Shown one piece after another: positions 30,693 through 40,912 of a stretch of 64,000 nt of DNA. Source of the stretch: Saccostrea cucullata (Eukaryota); the NCBI RefSeq assembly GCF_032062105.1, contig NW_026931726.1, positions 310,001 through 374,000 of the forward strand. The letters run 5' to 3'. A program made the translations under genes and the position numbers. Numbering within the stretch: position 1 is the stretch's first letter; each line of letters begins with the position of its first letter. Below the pieces are notes generated by a model, which ran no database searches, was not told the DNA's origin, and worked only from the letters and a program-made list of their open reading frames with translations.

Positions 30693-33600
30693 ATGGACGA
30701 TGGTTGTCAGCGGAAAATATTTTTCATAAGCACATTTGTCCTATCAGTAGCTGTAATGATTGAATTATGATAATATTATTTGTTTTGTATAAAATTTGTA
30801 ACTTGACCATGTATTGTCTTCAGTTATATACGAAGATTGTTCTACATGTCCATGCATAGTTTTAGTTAGTTTGAACATTGTGAAATATTTGTTTACCTCT
30901 CAACAACAGTAGGGGTATGATATCTTATGGTCAGAAGCATATGACCTACATGTAGATTTCAAATTCAGTCATTTTGTGTTTCAGCTCCTAATTCATGGAC
31001 TTCATTCAAGTAAAGATGCTACGAATGTCAAACTTGTCCATGTGATATTTATGAATCATTTGGGTAAGTATTCTTTTATTAATAGAAACAGGGACCTATA
31101 TACTTAGGCTAGCACACATATATAGGTCCCTGATAGAAATCTTGTCATGGTAAAGAGTGTGATTATACTTAACAACTATTATGCATTTGTGGGGTGATGT
31201 TTTAATTAATACAAGAATACAACTCCGTGCAATGCAGACTGGCATTTATACAGCCCCATTGGCCCAACAATTAGTATGACTCTTCTGCTATTGCTTTAAA
31301 TATCATGTAAGATTATTTATTTGGTTCTAGTTCAAAAGTTTATATACAGACTAAGAGTCAATTCAGTCATCTTTTTTCACCTGGTGCCAATAAGAAGTAG
31401 TCATGAAAACATTAAAGACTAGTTGGAGAAAATGATTTTCTTTTATAAATTCTGATTTTAGGTAGTTAAATTATTTAGTAAGTTTTTAACCATTATACTT
31501 CTTTTTCATTTATTTTAGATGTGGGCTATGATGGAATTTCGCCAGAAGTAGGATTTATAAATAACATTCTCAATAAATACTTTCATGAATACTTTCCAAG
31601 AGCTGTGAATTTGTCTGTTCAGTTACGAGCTGGAGAATATGCTGAAAATTTTGTGTATACAACCCATCCCTGGCTGGTCAGCTTGTTTTTGGATTGTCCA
31701 GAAAGTTTCAAGCTTACAGACATCCCACTATTGGTACACTTAATTTTAACCTGTATATAAACTTAAGTAAGGAGCTTAATGACGTAAAGAAGAATGTTAA
31801 ACCTGAGCAATTTTTTTTATTTGCAACTTAAATTTTTTAACATGTTAACATGCATTAGTTGATAAGTTTGATTTACATTTTTTGCAATATTAAATAATCT
31901 TTTACTGTAATACCGCATTATTTACCGTCCCAGTTTATCTCATATATATCAGATATATATCATATATCATGTCATTGTTAAACAGTGCCCTAATGAAACT
32001 GAGAAGGAATACTTTGAGGCAGCTATTAAGAGAGGAGACATTACATGGCATGCTGGTCCTATGAACATGCAGCCAGAGAACATGAACAGCCTGCTCTTCC
32101 AGATGAGCTTGAACATGAGTTTTGACCTCGACAAAAGATTTGGAATTACAAGACTGTTTCCAACACTGAGTCAGAGAGATGTACCAGGTAAGAATAATTT
32201 ATATGTACATGTACCTTTACTTTTTATGCTATTGAGATAAGATAAATCTATAAGCACCATTCATTTTACTGGGCACTGCATTGAAGTACACAATTCCACT
32301 TTTTACTTGCTGTAAAATCAGTTATTTTTTTAATTTCAAAATTTTCATGGTTTAGAAAAAATCCTGGTTTAAGGGGATTATAATTATTTCGTGTTTGATA
32401 TTTCATGAATGATATAAATTCATGGGTCTTAATTGAAAATTATAAAACTTAAATCCCCACAAAATAAAGTGATTTCACAGTATTTGGTTTCTTTAAAGTA
32501 TTCCAGAATTTCTTTGAACTGTTATCATTCAAATACATGGGATATACAAGTAATTGTACTCGCAGGATGCTTATATATAATTCCTGTAGTGTAAACATGA
32601 TTAAGAATCACTCCATTTTGTCATGTTTTATAATAAGGACTGACACAAGCAGTGATCCCTAGCCTGGTACAGAGGGGGGTCTCTGCTGTTTCTGTCGGGG
32701 TCAATCCAGGCACCAGTCCGCCAGCCGTTCCTCAACTCTTCAGGTGGAGCTTTGAGAGTAATGAAGTTTTGGCAACATGGCATCCAGGTAATTTTGATTA
32801 CAACTATTCTCAATTTACCTGTAGATTGTATGTTGTAAGTTCATGTTGAGGAGATCAGTGCTAGTGTGTTGGACCAGATCAGGATTTGAACCCAAACTCC
32901 ATGAATAGTCAGGTGCTCTATCAACTGAGCTGTCTGTCCAATAGCTATCTAACCTATAGCTCCCTGTAATTGAACGTTCCTAGTCATCACACATGTATAA
33001 ACCAATGACACAAATGAAATTGGAAAAACAAGCAGTGAAGTTTTTATTGAAATATTTTGATTGGATTTTATTTTGTGCATTGGGAGAGTTATCTCCCTGT
33101 GTAGTATAAGAATATTTATATATGTACTAAGTGATCTTAGAAAAAAATCTGTTTTTACATTTCATTCTTGTAATGTTTTAAGTTGTATTTGCAGGAGGTT
33201 ACCCACTGGGACCAGGGCCAAACCCAGCCCGCCCTGGAGGGCTGTCAACTAAAGACTGTGTGGTGCTGCCAGGATTTGAACATGCTCTTTGTTTTGCTTT
33301 TATACAAGATAATGGAGGTCCTCCAATTGATGTCCTGGTAAACATGTATTACATGTAATATTAAAGTATAAATGGGTTCTTGAATTTTGTGCACTTTATT
33401 GATGATTAAATGGATTATTTTTGGTATTTGCAGGAAATTTTAAGCAACTACGAAATTCTTAGAAAAGAGTTTCCAAATGCTAAAATAAAAGGATCCACGT
33501 TTGAGGATTATTTTGCGGAGGTGGACAAGATCAGAAATCATCTGCCCATTATCAGACAGGAAGTGGGCGACACTTGGATACAGGGAATATCATCAGATCC

Positions 33601-36600
33601 TGTCAAAATGGCCCACTATAGAGCCATTAGTGAAACAATGTCAGATTGTGTAATCTCTGGTAGGATCAAATTTTATAGTGGTACATTTTCTTACTAATGC
33701 ACATGTATGAAATGAGAAAATAGCAGGAGGTGAAGGGGGAGGAAAAGAGGGGGGGGGGGGGAGAGAATCCATGTGTAAATAGATTCTTAAAGACTTTGAG
33801 TGCTCTGAATATAAAAAGTATTCATGATTTATGCAGAGTATTAACAATTTTATGAAGTATTTAAAAAAGACCTTTTTGTATTAAATTATTGTTACATGTA
33901 CTACATATTGCAAGTTAGATTTGTAAGAATTTTTCATTACAAAAATAGGTGCTTGCAATATATCTGATCCAAGTATAGTGAGTGCAGCTAGGCTACTTAT
34001 CAAGCTACCAGAACACACATGGGGTCTTCCAGGGGTAGGGGACAATGTTAACTGGAGCAACCCACAGTTCAACATTGCAAGACGAGGTAGGTACTGGATG
34101 TGTTAGTAAAATCTTAATTACAACCCACAGTTCAAGTTGGCAAGACAAGGTAGGCTCTAGCTCAGCATGCATGTAAAATCAAAATTAATTTCTAACTATA
34201 TATATACATGTATAGTGTATAGTGTATGTAATGCTATTGCCAAAGTCTTTTTTTTATTTCAAGGCTTTGATGAGAGTGTTCAATAATTTTTTCAAGAGTT
34301 AGAAAGCAAAATGTTACCACACAGTAAAATTCTGTTTGAAGGTGAGAATTTTAGGAACTGTGAAAAGGCTTGGCAGGAGCAGAGAGCGTTTCTTGGAATG
34401 GCCATGGATCAGCTGAAGAATACACCACCATTGTATAAGATGATTGAACAAGCTCTATCTCAGCTGGTGCCACAGGAACCAGATCTCAGTGGTCAGTTCT
34501 TTTTATACTTGTCCACTTGTTTAGATTTTTTTCATCAAAAAATTTACTGATACTTAAAAAATAGACAATATGTATAACATACCTTTGAGGAGTCTTAAAT
34601 GACATGGACAACTGAAATAATTTTGTATCTGAATGTTCTGAGATTTTTAGCACACTTCTTTACAACAATTAAACAATTAATGATTTACTTTCTCTGATAT
34701 ACATAATTATGCATTTATTTTATCCACAGCCTATGAAATAGTCACTGACATGTCAGAGACATTTAAATGTGAAGATGGAATGAAAATCCAGTTTGGAAAG
34801 GATGGATCACTCCTGTCATTATATGATCCTTATAATTTTGTAAGGCTAGTTTTGTAATGAGAGATATTTTGAAATCCTGAGAGTAAAAAAAAAAAGTTCA
34901 TTTTTCTGAACAATCTTCTTTTTGAATAGACTATTTGGCAGCAATTTAGAATTATGATTTTATCCCAAGCAGAACTTGGAATAAATTTAATAATTTATAT
35001 TATCATCTAAAACTTATTCTCTGCTGTATTAATTATATAATTTTGTCTGAAACCTACTCAGGTAGAGTGGGCAACAGGTGCCCCTCTAGGACAGTTTCGG
35101 TACATCACCTATAATGAGACAAATTTTATGGACATGGCCAGGCAGTATAATTATTATGGTGGAGCAGGGTATGACAAGAAAAACTCCACCAAAAATGCCC
35201 ATCCTGAATACAGACCTTGGCCAGCAGTTCTCAGTCAAATGTATCGAGCCAAAAAATCAGGTAATTTAACTTATCCCATACATTTAATTTAGCTTCGTCT
35301 TGTAACATTGATTTGCTTTCAAAATCCATCCCATTCTGGATTAAACTTCATGTACATATTTCTTAAGTTCGTAGGAATCAGTGAAGCATATTCAGTCTTA
35401 TTTTGGTATCTTCAGCTTTAGATAGTTGTGACATTCTACTTAAAATGGTGATGGCAGATTCAAAAAGTCACACATGGTATGGAGCTCCAGAGTCTGTATG
35501 GATAAACTACAAGTCAAGAGCTGAAGGTAAATCCTAGTACCTCAAACAGAATACATGGTGTTAGAATCTACATTTTATCATTCATATCAACCCCAACATT
35601 TTATCTCTCAGGATTTGATGTAACATTGCAATGGACAAACAAAACACCAACAAGACTAGCAGAATCAATGATGTACCACTTCAGTCCGGCCAAGAAGAAG
35701 GGCTTTAATTGGAGATTGTCTAAAGTAGGTCACCTAGTGGACCCGGGTAATGTCATTCTCAATGGAAGTCAGTATGTTCATGGTAAGTTGATCTGTAATC
35801 ATGCCCCATCATGATGTAATCATGAAAATGGCCGGGCCGTACAGAGTTTGTCATGTATGTCTTCTGTCCTTCTAGCTGTCCTTCTGTCCCGTTTGCTCAG
35901 TTCAAAGCTCATTTTCAAAGAAACTATTCAAGATATTTTTATCAAACTTCCTATGCTGATAGATATTGATGACAGCTATTCAACTGCATCAACATATTTT
36001 GACCTTTACCTTTCCTTTGACCTTGACCTCACTTTTCTTACAATACTATTTTGCTCAGTTTTAAAGAAACTATTCAAGATCGAAGTTCAAATGCTGATAC
36101 ATACTGATGTGAGCTATTCAACTACATAAGCATTCTTTGACCTTGACCTTTTCTTTTACCTTGACCTTACTTTTCTTAAATTAGTGTTTAGCTTAGTTTG
36201 AAGCAACCAATCAAGATATTTTTATCAAACTTTGTATGCTGATAGATATTAGTGAGAGCTATTCTACTGTATCAACAATTTTTGACCTTGCACTTTCCTA
36301 TGACCTTGACCTCACTTGTTTTAAATTTGCATTTTGCTCAATTTTAAAGAAACTGTTTGATACTTTTTTATGTAAGGTTCTGCACATATAAATAATTTGG
36401 TGATAATTTATTGTCTATATATCCATTTTTTTAGGTCACCTGAGTAACTCAGGCGACCTATTGCTATCCGTTTTCGTCCGTCGTCGTCTGTCGTGTGTCG
36501 TGTGTTAACATTTGAACATTTTCAGCTTCTTCTCTGAAACCATGGAACCAATTTCAACTAAATTTGGTATACAGCATCTATGAGGGAAGGGGAACAAAAA

Positions 36601-39600
36601 TTATGAATTTCATTGTCCCCGCCCCCCTGGGGCCTGAGGGGTGTGGCCAAAACCACTAAAATTATTGCAATCTTTAAAAATCTTCTTCTTTACTCCTGGA
36701 CATTAAGCAAACAAACTGTTGCCATGAATGTAATGAGCATTGAGTCCTCTACCAAAATTGTGAAATTCATGGCCCCAGGGTCAGGGGTTCTAGTGCTAGG
36801 GCCGGGCTATATAGATTATATAGTGAAAATGCATTCTTTCTTTGAAAATCTTCTTCTCTGCATCTGGTCATTAAATAAACTAACTAAGTACATAGTTATG
36901 ATGAGCAAGAGTGCCTCTTCCAGATTTGTTAATTTTATGGTCCCAGGATCAGGGGTTCTGGTGTTTGGGTGGGGCTCTATTGATTATATAGTGAAAATGC
37001 ATTTATTCTTTGAAAATCTTCTTCTCTGCTTCTGGGTATTAAATAAACTAATTAAGCACATACTTATGATGAGCAAGAGTGCCTTTTTCAAAATTTTGAA
37101 TTTTATGGCCGCAGGGTCAGGGGTTCTGGATTATTTCTTTGAAAATCTTTTTCTCTTCTTCTGGTTATTAAATAAACTAACTAAGCACATCGTTATGATG
37201 AGCAAGAGTGCCTCTTCTAAAATTGAGAATTTTATGGCCCCAGGGTCAGGGGTTCTGGTGTTAGGGCGGGGCTCTATTGATTATATAGTGAAAATGCATT
37301 ATTCTTTGAAAATCTTCTTCTCTGCTTCTGGGTATTAAATAAACTAACTAAGTACATAGTTATGATGAGCAAGAGTGCCTCTTCCAAAGTTGTGAATTTT
37401 ATGGCCCCAGGGTTAGGGGTTCTGGTGTTAGGGCAGGGCTCTATTGATTATATAGTAAAAATACATTAATTCTTTGAAAATATTTTCCTTTGCTTCTGGG
37501 TTTTATGCCAATGATCCAAGTATATATATTTATGATGTAGAAAGGTGCATCTAGCAAAGTGGTTTTTTTATGCCCCCTGGGTCGGGGGGGGGGGGGGGGT
37601 ACTTAGTTTGAAAATAAATTAATGCTTTGAAATCTGCTCTTTGGTATTAATCAACCATTTTATGATAAAATTTGCAAAATTTTGAAACATGTGTCCCCTG
37701 GGTCAGTGGTTCCTTTGGGGTGAGGTGCACAACTGGGTATAAAGTGGAAGTGTATTTTCTCTTTGTTACTCTGATCTACCTCTGGGTATTAAGTAAATAG
37801 AGTAAGCATGCTAAGTTAATAATTATATGCCCGTCTTAAGACGGGACGTATTATGTTATAGGCTTCGTGTCCGTCCGTCTTTCCGTCTGTCTGTTAGCTT
37901 TTTGTTTCCGGCTCATAACTTTAATACTACTAGGCCTAGGATTACCAAACTTTGTCATCTGATGCATCTTGGGTAGAAGGTGTGTCGCGCACAAAAAGTA
38001 GGTCGCTCTGACCTTTAATTAAGAAGTTATAGCCAAATATGGAAAAATCCTTTCCGGCCCATAACTAGAAAACCATAAGACCTACAATCATCAAACTTGG
38101 CCAGTTTATGCATCTTAGGTAGAAGGTGTGTCGCGACCTATTTCAAGGTCACTGTGACCTTTAATTTAAGTGAATTTTTTAAAAAAAATGTGTCTTTTTA
38201 CTATTCATTTACACATCCCAAATAATGTAAGAGTATTGCACTGTTCTTATTAAAAAAGTGTTAAATCAAGAAAATACTTATTTTTTTTAAGCATATACTT
38301 GACAGCAATCTAAAACAAATATAATGTATGTTAGAGAAATCCCATGTCTCCCATGAGTGTAATTATCAAGCACTGGTCAAGAAGAATTTTGATAACAGAA
38401 AATTGCATGTCAAATTAGAGAGAAATTAATGGGTTTTGAGTGCGAGGAGCTATTGACAGAGCATTGGCGTTATCTATATCCCTTGAGAATTGGGCAAATT
38501 TAGGGTAAGCCTGGCTGTTTGATTAAAAATAGCTCTTGTTGACTAGCTTAAGTTTTGAAATGAATTTGATGAAAAGTAATTAAAACTAATTTGATATTGC
38601 ATAATAGACTAATCTGATATTATGTAATATTATTAATTTAAAAACTAATTTTTTGGGGTGGGGTTGAATCAGCATGTCCATATGAATTACATACTAAAAC
38701 CTGTCGGACATTAAATCTCAACCAAAAAAAAAAAATCTGAGAGTATTTTATATGTTTTTAAAAACGTATTATAGTGCAGACCCATTCATCTCTTGGTAGT
38801 AATGAGTAGACAAGCATCCAGTTAAAGATTAATTAATGAGTTCAATGTAGGAAGGCTAGCTGTCTCAGTCGCTCTGATTAAGCAGCCCTTTGGGGATTAG
38901 ACAGAAGAACTGCTGGTCAGTTTATAACATATGTCATTTGATGGCCAGCCTTTTTTTTCAAAATTAATTTGGTATAGATTAAGTTGTTAAGACTAATTTG
39001 ATGATGGGCATTTGACAAGGTCTAACACAACCAGCACAGAAATCTATCAGTGATGTAATATTTATTATAATTGATGCCTACATCACAGGGGATGGATAAA
39101 TGACAAATCATCGAAATCTTAGAATCAAAGTTGATGTGATTTTCTTGCACCTAAACTGTTCAAGAAAATTGTAATTTTTTGACGGGCGTATCATGCTGTG
39201 GCGCGGCACTTTATTATGATGAGCAATGGTGCCTCTTTCAAAATTGTGAATTGTGAATTTCATGGCCTCTGGTTTAAAACACGACCAAATTTAATTGTTT
39301 GAAAGTTGTTACACAGTACTCAGGTGACCTATAAGGCCCGTGGGCCTCTTGTTTAGATTTAATATTTTCAATTTTAAAGAAACTGTTCAAGTCTTCATAA
39401 GATATTTTTATCATATACACTAATACAAATTTTCATGTTACATTACTAATATACATTCAGTGGGGAATGCATATCCTATGGACATATTTCTAGTTTCCAA
39501 ATTTCATTTGCATTTGCCTGTCTTAATAATATTTTAGAATCATGGTTATTAATTTCTTTATAATCAAAGATGTACTTTTTAATTGAAAAAATATCCCTGA

Positions 39601-40912
39601 AATGCTCTTTTCCTGCATGGTGATTATTTCAATAAAATCACGCAAAAGAAACAGCATATCATGGGTGATATAAACTTTATCAACTAATATTATTATAATA
39701 TAAGATTATTTTCGTAGTTTTCATTGGCTGAAAGGACGTCACGTGATATTCCTCCTTTTGCCATATCGACGCGACAGCTCGTCCGCGGAAAATGATATCG
39801 CACGACACGTCGTTTGGTTGCACTGAAGTTACGTAAAACGTGACTTCATAATAAAAGAAGCGTGAAATTAACCATTGTGACGTAATGACAGTCAAGTCCG
39901 TTCAGTTAGGACTGTGTCAGTGCATTCAATTTGAGTGATTATATAATATAACTATTATGGACTTCAGTGAACGGTCAATATGTAGTTATAAGGACTCATG
40001 GCAACTGATATTGACCTCAGACACAGAAAATGATAGCGACCTCGCAGGCTCGGTCGCTATCACTTTCTGTGTCTTCGGTCAATATCAATTGCCATGAGTC
40101 CTTATAACCACATATCGACCTACACTGAAGTCCATAATTGTATAATATTTACATTTCCAATAAATTTCCCCTATGCAGTTCATTTTCTCATGAACTACAT
40201 TAGATATGTACCACGAATAAGCATGAATATCTCCATTGTTACGTCATAATTCGGCACTAGACATAAAAAAATAAAGTGCACACTGTTTTGCTTTAAAAAT
40301 GACAGTTGAATGGCGTAAATTTATAGCAAGTCATCTGAAAAATAATGTAAATATAAGAAATGAATTTAATCTTCGAAGATTCATGAGGTATATGAACTAC
40401 AACGCTTCATGCTGGCATATTTATCATGAAATATGCCGGCGTGAAGCGTCGTAGTTCATAACCTCATGAATCTTCAAAAATTAAATTCATTTCATAAATA
40501 AATCACATTACTCAAATGGAATAATCTCGTATATTTAAAGCAATTCATTTTTTAAAGACAAATAAAAACTGTGTGTTTGATCGCCTGATGCATACCTAAT
40601 TAAATTACTATTGTCTTCCTTACAGCTGTTGACAGTGGTGCATATTACATCAATAACATCGGACAAGGTCTCCAACTCCTTACTCCAGATGTACCACTGG
40701 TTTCCATAGCAACAAAAGAGAGACCACCTTCACCTTTTCCTGTTCCGCTAAAGCCCATTTCACAAAGTGACATTTCTGGGGTAGCCTTTAATTTGTTTAA
40801 TAATATATGGAATACAAATTACATATTGTGGTATCCATACAACGATGGAACAAACTCTTCTAAACCTGGTGATTTTAAAGCAAGATTTCAAATTAACTTT
40901 TATGTACCATAG
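30693..40912 (+). CDS. Secreted DUF5054-family / GH38-like putative glycoside hydrolase (14 exons, 746 aa)
   Basis: Exons 30693-30752, 30985-31063, 31519-31733, 31986-32187, 32638-32787, 33195-33337, 33434-33659, 33949-34086, 34342-34491, 34730-34839, 35062-35260, 35416-35526, 35612-35782, 40626-40912, total 2241 nt, open throughout. N-terminal signal peptide. Motifs MNHLDVGY, ITWHAGP, QRDVPG, DNGGPP, EVGDTWIQGISSDPVK, EHTWG, KTPTRLAES, FNLFNNIWNTNYILWYP. Confidence 0.88.
31089..31132. mobile_element. 44-bp palindromic micro-MITE with 7-bp TSD
   Basis: CAGGGACCTATATA...TATATAGGTCCCTG flanked by ATAGAAA at 31082 and 31133. Confidence 0.75.
32870..32935 (-). mobile_element. tRNA-derived SINE head (degenerate)
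   Basis: Minus strand reads AGCTCAGTTGATAGAGCACCTG (A box) ... GGGTTCAAATCC (B box). No complete cloverleaf. Confidence 0.65.
35798..39495 (+). mobile_element. Triple-nested HINE-like elements in DUF5054 intron 13; the middle element (36428-39353) carries a Cg170-like 168-bp satellite, the inner element spans 37822-39214
   Basis: Middle element: TAGGTCACCTGAGT head and ACTCAGGTGACCTATAAGGCCCGTGGGCCTCTTGTT tail; AGGGGTTCT units at 36783, 36951, 37119, 37248, 37415. Inner element: ATGCCCGTC..GACGGG head and GACGGGCGTAT tail. The outer array resumes after 39353. Confidence 0.75.
39680..40148. mobile_element. Non-autonomous element ending in a ~185-bp palindrome (39954-40138)
   Basis: Arms ATTATGGACTTCAGTG...GACACAGAAA and TTTCTGTGTC...CACTGAAGTCCATAAT around a CTCGCAGGCTCG loop. 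Confidence 0.75.
40357..40493. repeat. ~137-bp near-perfect palindrome
   Basis: GAAATGAATTTAAT..GAAGATTCATGAGG..GGCATATTT / AAATATGCC..CCTCATGAATCTTC..ATTAAATTCATTTC. Confidence 0.85.

What the first reader, a model, noticed from the sequence alone, without database searches (positions are those of the whole stretch)
30693..40912. Intron-rich animal gene for a secreted DUF5054 protein that appears to keep a full GH38-type metal/catalytic site: candidate uncharacterised glycosidase
Seen: 14 exons splice into a 746-aa ORF with a signal peptide and several N-x-S/T sequons (NLS, NET, NMS, NIS, NWS, NST, NKT, NGS, NSS). The ORF track shows only fragments of it. Established: GH38 alpha-mannosidases bind Zn2+ through an N-terminal H-x-D pair, the nucleophile Asp (DPFG-type motif) and a later His, and use a second Asp as acid/base. 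Inference: MNHLDVGY, QRDVPG, QDNGGPP and PEHTWG supply these residues in the same order, so this is probably an active retaining glycosidase of unknown substrate. I recall DUF5054 mainly from bacteria and algae/protists and not from vertebrates (unverified recollection). It could be a digestive or lysosomal enzyme for algal or bacterial glycans, either patchily retained or anciently transferred.
Basis: partly seen in the sequence, partly recalled or inferred. Interest (0 to 1): 0.8.

Follow-up and report, generated by a model that had tools for sequence, protein, structure and literature searches.

The report
Oyster GH38-like orphan glycosidase gene
This is a real 14-exon oyster gene for a secretory-type protein of the unstudied DUF5054 family; its predicted structure and invariant residues match zinc-dependent GH38 alpha-mannosidases, so it is probably an active sugar-cleaving enzyme, but its substrate is unknown and the gene is already annotated as 'uncharacterized'.

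Summary
Fourteen GT-AG exons (30693-40912, + strand) splice into a 746-aa ORF that is letter-for-letter the RefSeq protein 'uncharacterized protein LOC134233351 [Saccostrea cucullata]'.

- **Family:** it scores 118.6 bits on Pfam DUF5054 (cut-off 37.6).
- **Fold:** the AlphaFold model (pLDDT 94.4) superposes on GH38 alpha-mannosidases over all three domains (S. pyogenes GH38: Z 21.1, 543 residues, rmsd 3.3 Å).
- **Active site:** a profile-profile alignment with GH38 (probability 90%, E 1.8e-6) pairs H45, D47, D183 and D274 with the GH38 metal ligands, nucleophile and acid/base. H381 fits the fourth ligand by motif and topology only.
- **Conservation:** 94 of 100 relatives keep all five residues; the six exceptions look like faulty gene models.
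- **Departures from GH38:** two second-shell residues differ invariantly (Arg/Lys to G206, Asp to T382), so the substrate may not be a classical mannoside.
- **Distribution:** molluscs, brachiopod, nemerteans, annelids, a flatworm, hemichordates, sponges and many protists. No vertebrate, arthropod or nematode was named among the hits shown. The tree fits vertical descent with losses.

No paper mentions the family. UniProt already auto-names relatives 'GH38 N-terminal domain-containing'. It is a sound enzyme-discovery lead of moderate interest.

The parts
30693..30752 (+). Exon 1 (aa 1-20): start codon and most of the hydrophobic signal-peptide-like segment
   Evidence: donor GTAATG; product identical to P0205
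30985..31063 (+). Exon 2 (aa 21-47, phase 0 in, 1 out): end of the signal segment and beta-strand 1 ending in H45 (codon 31057-31059). The D47 codon is split by intron 2 (31063 + 31519-31520).
31519..31733 (+). Exon 3 (aa 47-118): D47, Y50, the YTTHPWL motif and C106
31986..32187 (+). Exon 4 (aa 119-186): C119, ITWHAGPMN and SQRDVPG, with R182 and the putative nucleophile D183 (codon 32178-32180)
32638..32787 (+). Exon 5 (aa 186-236): SVGVN with invariant G206 and N208
33195..33337 (+). Exon 6 (aa 236-283): beta-strand ending in D274-N275-G-G-P-P, the putative acid/base D274 (codon 33308-33310)
33434..33659 (+). Exon 7 (aa 284-359): invariant E326, D329, W331 and D338; start of the Pfam DUF5054 match and of the helical bundle
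33949..34086 (+). Exon 8 (aa 359-405): K-L-P-E-H381-T382-W-G, the putative fourth metal ligand H381 (codon 34014-34016)
34342..34491 (+). Exon 9 (aa 405-455). The acceptor is at 34342, not at 34297 as in my first model.
   Evidence: best single-exon Pfam DUF5054 hit (6.4e-08)
34730..34839 (+). Exon 10 (aa 455-491): start of the beta-sandwich part
35062..35260 (+). Exon 11 (aa 492-558)
35416..35526 (+). Exon 12 (aa 558-595)
35612..35782 (+). Exon 13 (aa 595-652)
   Evidence: blastn did not align it, but the 171-base gap in the contig equals its length.
40626..40912 (+). Exon 14 (aa 652-746 plus TAG), with the conserved FNLxNNIWxTNY motif. It follows the 4.8-kb repeat-rich intron 13.

Best explanation
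The locus is a functional, vertically inherited oyster gene (very probably Saccostrea cucullata LOC134233351). It encodes a secretory-pathway enzyme of the DUF5054 branch of the GH38 superfamily. Shown here: the gene structure, the family membership, the GH38-like three-domain fold and the near-invariance of the candidate site residues. Inferred: a divalent metal (Zn2+ in GH38) is held by H45, D47, D183 and H381. D183 attacks the anomeric carbon as nucleophile and D274 acts as general acid/base. This would give hydrolysis with net retention, as in GH38. Because the GH38 metal binds the O2/O3 cis-diol of the -1 sugar, the best guess for that sugar is mannose or a sugar with the same diol. The invariant changes G206 (Arg/Lys in GH38) and T382 (Asp in GH38) suggest a different linkage or aglycone, or a different sugar. 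Whether the enzyme works outside the cell (digestion), in lysosomes or in the Golgi is not known.
For: Gene model: identical to P0205. Transcript-like contig of a related oyster with matching junctions. dN/dS 0.067. Family: Pfam DUF5054 at 118.6 bits, E 6.9e-34, residues 335-591. Fold: AF2 pLDDT 94.4, pTM 0.93. VIA-align to 2wyi_A gives Z 21.1, rmsd 3.3 Å, 543 residues, model 33-746 against chain 1-789; dGMII, jack bean and Ams1 give Z 18-19. Foldseek on the Haliotis homologue lists GH38 entries at ranks 1-40 (best E 2.8e-21), then GH57 at TM 0.27-0.30. Site mapping: hhalign of the 100-sequence family profile against a 20-sequence GH38 profile gives probability 89.8% and E 1.8e-6 over 34-354 against MngB 3-290. 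It pairs H45-H14, D47-D16, Y50-W19, D183-D126 (PDSFG) and D274-D222. The VIA offset of 32 puts H45 and D47 on SpGH38 H13 and D15, which the crystal-structure paper names as Zn ligands together with D125 (nucleophile) and H351; D232 is the acid/base (PMC2815779). H381 lies in the loop between helices 2 and 3 of the bundle, like H351. It shares the K-x-x-x-H motif with GH38. Conservation: D183, D274, N275, G206, N208, E326, D329, W331 and D338 are 100%; D47, H381, T382 and R182 are 99%; H45 is 95%. 94 of 100 sequences keep H-D-D-D-H. Secretory traits: hydrophobic N-termini throughout the family, some with classic signal-peptide ends; ten sequons; conserved Cys pairs C106/C119 and C355/C361. ESM Atlas (lead only): bacterial clusters carry PF16477 in all members and PF01074 (GH38N) in 16-65%, or PF01074 in 97% with PF16477 in 65%, at TM 0.80-0.85 to the model.
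Against: No activity, metal or substrate data exist. Pfam GH38N does not match this protein at all, and matches only 1 of 32 relatives weakly, at E 0.034. A PDB sequence-profile search finds no GH38 chain. The helical-bundle part, which holds H381, gave no significant profile alignment. The greedy alignment placed D274 four residues away from MngB D222. The Arg/Lys next to the nucleophile strand and the Asp after the Zn-His, both substrate- or nucleophile-tuning residues in GH38, are absent.
Confidence: 0.65

Rival explanations
1. The protein is an active enzyme on the GH38 scaffold, but its chemistry or substrate is not GH38-like. It could be a transglycosidase, a glycosidase for a non-mannose sugar of algal or bacterial polymers, or a hydrolase of a non-glycosidic bond.
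For: G206 invariantly replaces the GH38 Arg/Lys and T382 replaces the GH38 Asp that binds the sugar hydroxyls. Family-specific invariant residues (N275, E326, D329, W331, D338, N208) have no described GH38 role. Identity to GH38 is only 10-13%. The N-domain also resembles a metal-dependent deacetylase (3qbu, Z 12.2).
Against: The metal tetrad and both catalytic Asp positions are kept exactly where GH38 has them. All three domains, not only the barrel, follow GH38. Deacetylase and GH57 matches are much weaker.
Confidence: 0.2
2. The protein is a non-catalytic glycan-binding protein or pseudoenzyme that keeps only the fold.
For: The function is untested. Two GH38 second-shell residues are lost.
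Against: All five candidate catalytic or metal residues are 95-100% conserved from amoebae to oysters. Purifying selection is strong (dN/dS 0.067). Pseudoenzymes usually lose the nucleophile or a metal ligand.
Confidence: 0.07
3. The gene was acquired by horizontal transfer from bacteria into molluscs, or is contamination, rather than an old animal gene.
For: ESM Atlas look-alikes are mostly bacterial DUF5054/GH38N clusters. The family is missing from the usual model animals among named hits.
Against: The gene has 13 spliceosomal introns. Bilaterian sequences form one clade (SH-aLRT 98), and within it the bivalve branching follows taxonomy: oysters, then Pinctada, scallops and mussel. Two paralogue groups predate the mollusc-nemertean split. 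Sponges, hemichordates and six or more protist lineages have it. No close relative was found by a motif scan of 185,579 bacterial and archaeal species genomes or in 401 sampled Pseudomonadota. Dense metagenome contigs carrying it hold eukaryotic neighbour genes.
Confidence: 0.05

Closest known systems
GH38 alpha-mannosidases, bacterial/cytosolic type (S. pyogenes SpGH38 2WYH/2WYI, E. faecalis 5KBP, E. coli MngB, yeast Ams1, Bl_Man38A)
   Same: The order of domains matches: N-terminal alpha/beta barrel, helical bundle, then beta-sandwich domains (Z 20.6-21.1, about 545 aligned residues). The H-x-D, D(nucleophile), D(acid/base) and K-x-x-x-H motifs come in the same order. The Ams1-type acid/base motif G-D-G-G-G-G-P resembles the family's D-N-x-G-P-P.
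   Different: Identity is 10-13%. There is no PF01074 hit for this protein. It is shorter (746 aa against 880-1100), and the aligned part of SpGH38 ends at 789 of 896. Gly replaces the Arg/Lys and Thr replaces the Asp after the Zn-His. It has a secretory N-terminus, sequons and disulfide-type Cys pairs, whereas these relatives are cytosolic.
Golgi alpha-mannosidase II and lysosomal/plant GH38 (dGMII 1HTY, jack bean 6B9O, bovine LAM 1O7D)
   Same: The fold matches (Z 15-19), both lie in the secretory pathway, and the metal plus two-Asp retaining machinery is expected.
   Different: The match is weaker than to the bacterial type. There is no long stem region. The second-shell differences are the same as above.
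Bacterial DUF5054 proteins (ESM Atlas clusters, mostly Acidobacteriota, Bacillota, Bacteroidota)
   Same: They share Pfam family PF16477 and have near-identical predicted folds (TM 0.85/0.91, rmsd 2.1-2.2 Å over about 660 residues). Many members also hit PF01074.
   Different: No sequences were obtained, so residue conservation and the root of the family are untested. They were not picked up by the eukaryote-derived motif scan.
GH57 (4-alpha-glucanotransferase, branching enzymes)
   Same: The N-terminal barrel comes from the same superfamily.
   Different: The match is far weaker (TM 0.27-0.30, rmsd 13-22 Å). By established knowledge GH57 uses a Glu nucleophile and no metal, whereas this family has the GH38 Asp and metal pattern.

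Membership tests
Pfam DUF5054 (PF16477) | HMM score above the curated gathering cut-off (37.6 bits) | tested here: met
   P0205 (identical to the spliced product) scores 118.6 bits, E 6.9e-34, residues 335-591 on profile 1-285 of 291. Exons 7, 8 and 9 hit profile positions 1-28, 38-73 and 101-148 in order. All 32 relatives scanned match.
GH38 (Pfam Glyco_hydro_38N PF01074 as proxy for the CAZy family) | Sequence-model match to the GH38 N-terminal domain | tested here: not met
   Residues 1-330 give no hit even at E up to 10, and no exon hits. Only 1 of 32 relatives hits, at E 0.034. The dbCAN/CAZy model is not available here.
GH38 | Three-part architecture: alpha/beta barrel, three-helix bundle, beta-sandwich domains | tested here: met
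   VIA-align gives Z 21.1, rmsd 3.3 Å and 543 residues over model 33-746. Foldseek on the homologue gives E 2.8e-21.
GH38 | N-terminal H-x-D metal ligands and the Asp nucleophile/metal ligand | tested here: met
   hhalign (probability 89.8%, E 1.8e-6) pairs H45-H14, D47-D16 and D183-D126 of MngB. The offset to SpGH38 gives H13 and D15. Conservation is 95, 99 and 100%.
GH38 | General acid/base Asp at the end of a later barrel strand | tested here: met
   D274 pairs with MngB D222, lies at the end of strand 265-274 and is 100% conserved. Caveat: the low-confidence greedy alignment shifted it by four residues.
GH38 | Fourth metal ligand: His from the loop between helices 2 and 3 of the helical bundle | tested here: inconclusive
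   H381 (99% conserved) lies in that loop and shares K-x-x-x-H with GH38. No significant profile alignment covers it and no coordinates were available.
GH38 | Asp directly after the Zn-His (D352 in SpGH38) and Arg/Lys facing the nucleophile (R149 in SpGH38) | tested here: not met
   T382 (99%) replaces the Asp. The matching segment reads V-G206-V-N208 with an invariant Gly where Ams1-type GH38 has Lys and MngB-type has Arg.
GH38 | Retaining alpha-mannosidase activity, divalent-metal dependence and swainsonine inhibition | not testable with these tools
   This needs recombinant protein.
GH57 | Close fold match to GH57 structures and a Glu nucleophile | tested here: not met
   GH57 chains reach only TM 0.27-0.30 with rmsd 13-22 Å. 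The aligned nucleophile position holds an invariant Asp.
Secreted or secretory-pathway proteins | Cleavable N-terminal signal peptide | tested here: inconclusive
   The hydrophobic core covers residues 9-23 (mean Kyte-Doolittle 2.75), preceded by R7-K8. A possible L-H-S|S cleavage site follows. Relatives from amoebae to sponges have similar N-termini. No signal-peptide predictor is available, so a type II signal anchor is not excluded.

The most novel reading that the evidence does not exclude
DUF5054 proteins are a functionally new glycosidase subfamily. They would keep the GH38 metal-assisted retaining machinery but have a re-tooled sugar pocket (G206, T382, and invariant N275, E326, D329, W331, D338). 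Phagotrophic protists and particle-feeding invertebrates would use them to break down an algal or microbial glycan that no characterised GH38 cleaves. The family would have been lost in vertebrates and ecdysozoans.
Probability: 0.25. Interest if true: 0.6.

Novelty: new member of a known kind. Interest (0 to 1): 0.4.

Why it matters
The family has several hundred members across molluscs, other lophotrochozoans, hemichordates, sponges and many protists. Yet the searchable literature holds no paper on it and no solved structure turned up, and no vertebrate, arthropod or nematode member was named among the hits shown. The site analysis here gives a concrete, cheap experiment: express the protein, test a pNP-glycoside panel with metals and swainsonine, and make D183 and D274 mutants. 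That could define a new specificity within the GH38 superfamily. It would also help annotate glycan processing or digestion in commercially important shellfish. It is not a surprise in kind: databases already link DUF5054 to GH38 automatically.

Tried and rejected
- **Exon-by-exon Pfam scans** gave no GH38N signal. PDB sequence searches with exon 4 and with the family profile found no GH38 chain.
- **First exon-9 acceptor (34297)** gave 761 aa. I rejected it after comparison with the orthologues and the transcript-like contig.
- **'Single copy in the genome'**, read, was wrong. A second paralogue lies on another contig.
- **hhalign against MngB alone or a shallow MngB profile** was not significant (probability 20% and 8%). 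It became significant only with a more diverse GH38 profile.
- **The protein search with MngB** returned only near-identical enterobacterial orthologues, so it was a poor use of a capped search.
- **The helical-bundle region alone** gave no significant profile alignment.
- **Bacterial relatives** were not found by the motif scan of species genomes, in 3 + 401 Pseudomonadota genomes or among metagenome loci, whose dense contigs proved eukaryotic. I could therefore not obtain bacterial DUF5054 sequences, root the tree or read bacterial gene neighbourhoods for substrate hints.
- **RNA reads:** the runs found held only about 10% of the sampled words.
- **Literature:** searches for DUF5054, PF16477, IPR032482 and six orthologue locus names returned no papers.
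- **Earlier findings of the scan** hold nothing on this family.
Full report
**What is in the sequence.** The six-frame ORF list between 30.6 and 41 kb shows only short open pieces on the + strand. Reading the DNA and joining pieces at AG/GT borders with matching phases gave 14 exons. My first choice of acceptor for exon 9 (34297) gave 761 aa. Oyster orthologues lacked exactly those 15 residues. With the acceptor at 34342 the product is 746 aa, with one stop at 40910-40912. This product is identical, residue for residue, to P0205, the NCBI protein 'uncharacterized protein LOC134233351 [Saccostrea cucullata]'. The window is thus very probably from that oyster, and earlier notes of this scan also call the genome an oyster.

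**How the spliced model was handled.** The joined model existed only inside local scripts that read window.fa. Once it proved identical to the database protein P0205, I used that id as the reference.

**Splicing and constraint.** There is therefore no read-level evidence from this species. One local pairwise blastn in a script did read the whole gene region from window.fa, those places included, although I had meant to mask them. Nothing aligned there.

Indirect evidence is good. A 2275-base contig assembled from run SRR24489148 carries an uninterrupted 722-aa ORF (P0204) that is 80% identical to the window protein. It aligns contiguously to exons 3-12 and 14. Its break points fall within a few bases of my junctions, including 34342, and the unaligned 171 bases equal the length of exon 13. 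dN/dS against that contig is 0.067, with dN 0.11 and dS 1.65.

**Family.**
- P0205 scores 118.6 bits (E 6.9e-34) on Pfam DUF5054 over residues 335-591. The N-terminal 330 residues hit no Pfam model, even at E 10, and NCBIfam has nothing.
- Exon 4 alone found 358 proteins at E ≤ 0.001 among 1.84 billion cluster representatives. Full-length hits align end to end with the model, and the ten scanned and all 32 carry DUF5054.
- No paper in the searchable library contains DUF5054, PF16477, IPR032482 or six orthologue locus names.
- UniProt's automatic name for several relatives is 'Glycoside hydrolase family 38 N-terminal domain-containing protein', so databases already hold the link to GH38.

**Fold.**
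- AlphaFold2 on P0205 with a 100-sequence alignment gave pLDDT 94.4 and pTM 0.93. The Haliotis homologue gave 91.8 and 0.90.
- Foldseek on the Haliotis model lists GH38 alpha-mannosidases at ranks 1-40 (best E 2.8e-21, about 780 alignment columns). GH57 follows at TM 0.27-0.30.
- VIA-align on the oyster model gives Z 21.1, rmsd 3.3 Å and 543 residues to S. pyogenes GH38 (2wyi_A), with model 33-746 against chain 1-789.
- Golgi mannosidase II, jack-bean mannosidase and Ams1 give Z 18-19. Unrelated galactose-mutarotase-like sandwiches, which match only the C-terminal part, come at Z ≤ 13.6. The whole three-part GH38 architecture is therefore present, at 10-13% identity.

[quoted passage not shown] It names D125 as the nucleophile and D232 as the acid/base, and lists D352, W18 and R149 as further site residues (PMC2815779).

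I assembled a GH38 profile of 20 sequences of two types, MngB-like and Ams1-like, from Pseudomonadota genomes. hhalign of the family profile against it gives probability 89.8% and E 1.8e-6 over 34-354 against MngB 3-290. The residue pairs are:

| This protein | E. coli MngB | Role in GH38 |
|---|---|---|
| H45 | H14 | metal ligand |
| D47 | D16 | metal ligand |
| Y50 | W19 | aromatic site residue |
| D183 | D126 (P-D-S-F-G) | nucleophile and metal ligand |
| D274 | D222 | acid/base |

The same pairing of H45 and D47 with SpGH38 H13 and D15 follows from the structural alignment offset of 32. In the model each residue sits at the C-terminal end of a strand (37-45, 178-183, 265-274).

H381 is less certain. 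It lies in the loop between bundle helices 366-375 and 406-428, as H351 does in SpGH38. It shares a K-x-x-x-H motif with both GH38 types. However, the bundle region alone gave no significant profile alignment. I could not measure distances because coordinates are not returned.

Conservation over 100 family members:

| Residues | Conserved in |
|---|---|
| D183, D274, N275, G206, N208, E326, D329, W331, D338 | 100 of 100 |
| D47, H381, T382, R182 | 99 of 100 |
| H45 | 95 of 100 |

In all, 94 of 100 sequences keep H-D-D-D-H. The six exceptions are N-terminally partial or doubtful gene models.

**Where it departs from GH38.**
- The Asp after the Zn-His is an invariant Thr (T382). That Asp is D352 in SpGH38 and is kept in 19 of my 20 GH38 sequences.
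- Where MngB-type enzymes have Arg and Ams1-type have Lys after the strand following the nucleophile, this family has an invariant Gly (G206) in V-G-V-N.
- R182, directly before the nucleophile, is 99% conserved and might take over that role. This is inference.
- The protein is also about 100-300 residues shorter than GH38 enzymes.

These differences argue for an altered pocket, and they are why I do not file it simply as an alpha-mannosidase.

**Secretory character.** Residues 9-23 form a hydrophobic core after R7-K8. Relatives from Filamoeba, Acrasis, Amphimedon, mussels and abalone all start with signal-peptide-like segments. The protein has ten sequons. The Cys pairs C106/C119 and C355/C361 are invariant or nearly so. 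A cleaved signal peptide is likely, but a type II anchor is not excluded.

**Distribution and history.** Named relatives come from the following groups:
- many gastropods and bivalves, including Ostrea, Crassostrea and Pinctada;
- Lingula, three nemertean genera, Owenia, Dimorphilus and Macrostomum;
- the hemichordates Ptychodera and Glandiceps;
- the sponges Amphimedon and Sycon;
- the protists Filamoeba, Gocevia, Acrasis, Diplonema, Gefionella, a Parmales stramenopile and the green alga Sanguina.

No vertebrate, arthropod, nematode, echinoderm or cnidarian was named among the 120 best hits of either search. Only the best 120 of 409 and of 294 hits are shown, so this is 'not seen', not 'absent'.

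An 86-sequence tree (quick IQ-TREE search, unrooted) puts the bilaterian rows, together with 14 unnamed metagenome or assembly sequences, in one clade with SH-aLRT support 98. Inside it are two paralogue groups, each holding nemerteans and molluscs. The window gene sits with Ostrea and Crassostrea (support 100), then Pinctada, scallops and Mytilus, following taxonomy. The oyster genome has a second paralogue at G000:C1292:508961-516191, so my earlier reading as 'single copy' was wrong.

A motif scan of 185,579 bacterial and archaeal species genomes found no close relative. Searches of 401 sampled Pseudomonadota also found none. Gene-dense metagenome contigs that carry the gene have eukaryotic neighbours such as EB1, Mlo and strumpellin. 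The ESM Atlas does hold bacterial DUF5054 clusters with nearly the same predicted fold (TM 0.85), many of which also match Pfam GH38N. These are leads, and I obtained no sequences for them. Together this favours an old eukaryotic gene with many losses over a recent transfer. The deep root remains open.

**Verdict.** The most likely mechanism is a secretory-pathway, metal-assisted retaining glycosidase. D183 would be the nucleophile and D274 the acid/base, with a mannose-like -1 sugar as first guess and an altered pocket. Its activity, substrate, metal and tissue are all untested. The gene is already annotated, and its GH38 likeness is already hinted at in automatic names, so the novelty is modest. 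The value is a well-defined candidate for characterising an unstudied enzyme family.

Noticed in passing
G000:C1292:508961-516191 (+), outside the window: A second DUF5054 paralogue lies in the same oyster genome. It matches exon by exon and is closer to the Pinctada/Haliotis 'group A' proteins (66-74% in the best exons). The Pfam-based own-genome search had missed it.
   Followed up: partly
window 32871-32939 (-), intron 5: Rfam tRNA match at 33.1 bits (gathering score 29) inside an intron. It is probably a tRNA-derived SINE rather than a tRNA gene.
   Followed up: no
window 35906-36353 and 36733-37505, intron 13: Tandem arrays of 138-bp units (3.1 copies, 73% matches) and about 168-bp units (84-90% matches). 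The second produces the spurious 241-aa ORF at 36613-37338.
   Followed up: no
window about 34119-34153, intron 8: The last ~30 bases of exon 8 together with its GTAGG donor are duplicated about 65 bases downstream in the intron. Stop codons lie between the two copies, so use of the second donor would not keep the frame open.
   Followed up: no
window 31063 / 31519-31520: The codon of the putative metal ligand D47 is split by intron 2 (G|AT). The H-x-D motif therefore exists only after splicing.
   Followed up: yes
L004 (ENA contig of 4.1 Mb) and proteins P0237-P0278: A clade of about 820-860-aa relatives with a ~100-aa N-terminal extension is encoded without introns on Mb-scale contigs of ENA metagenome assemblies that have sparse ORFs. 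Amphimedon queenslandica has an 838-aa member (P0419), so these may be sponge genes.
   Followed up: partly
P0043 (Patella vulgata, 899 aa) and P0234 (Dimorphilus, 1085 aa): These database proteins join DUF5054 to reprolysin/ADAM-type metalloprotease domains or to a lipase domain. Elysia and Plakobranchus relatives are named 'coiled-coil domain-containing protein 90B'. Merged gene models or misnaming seem likely.
   Followed up: no
   Followed up: no
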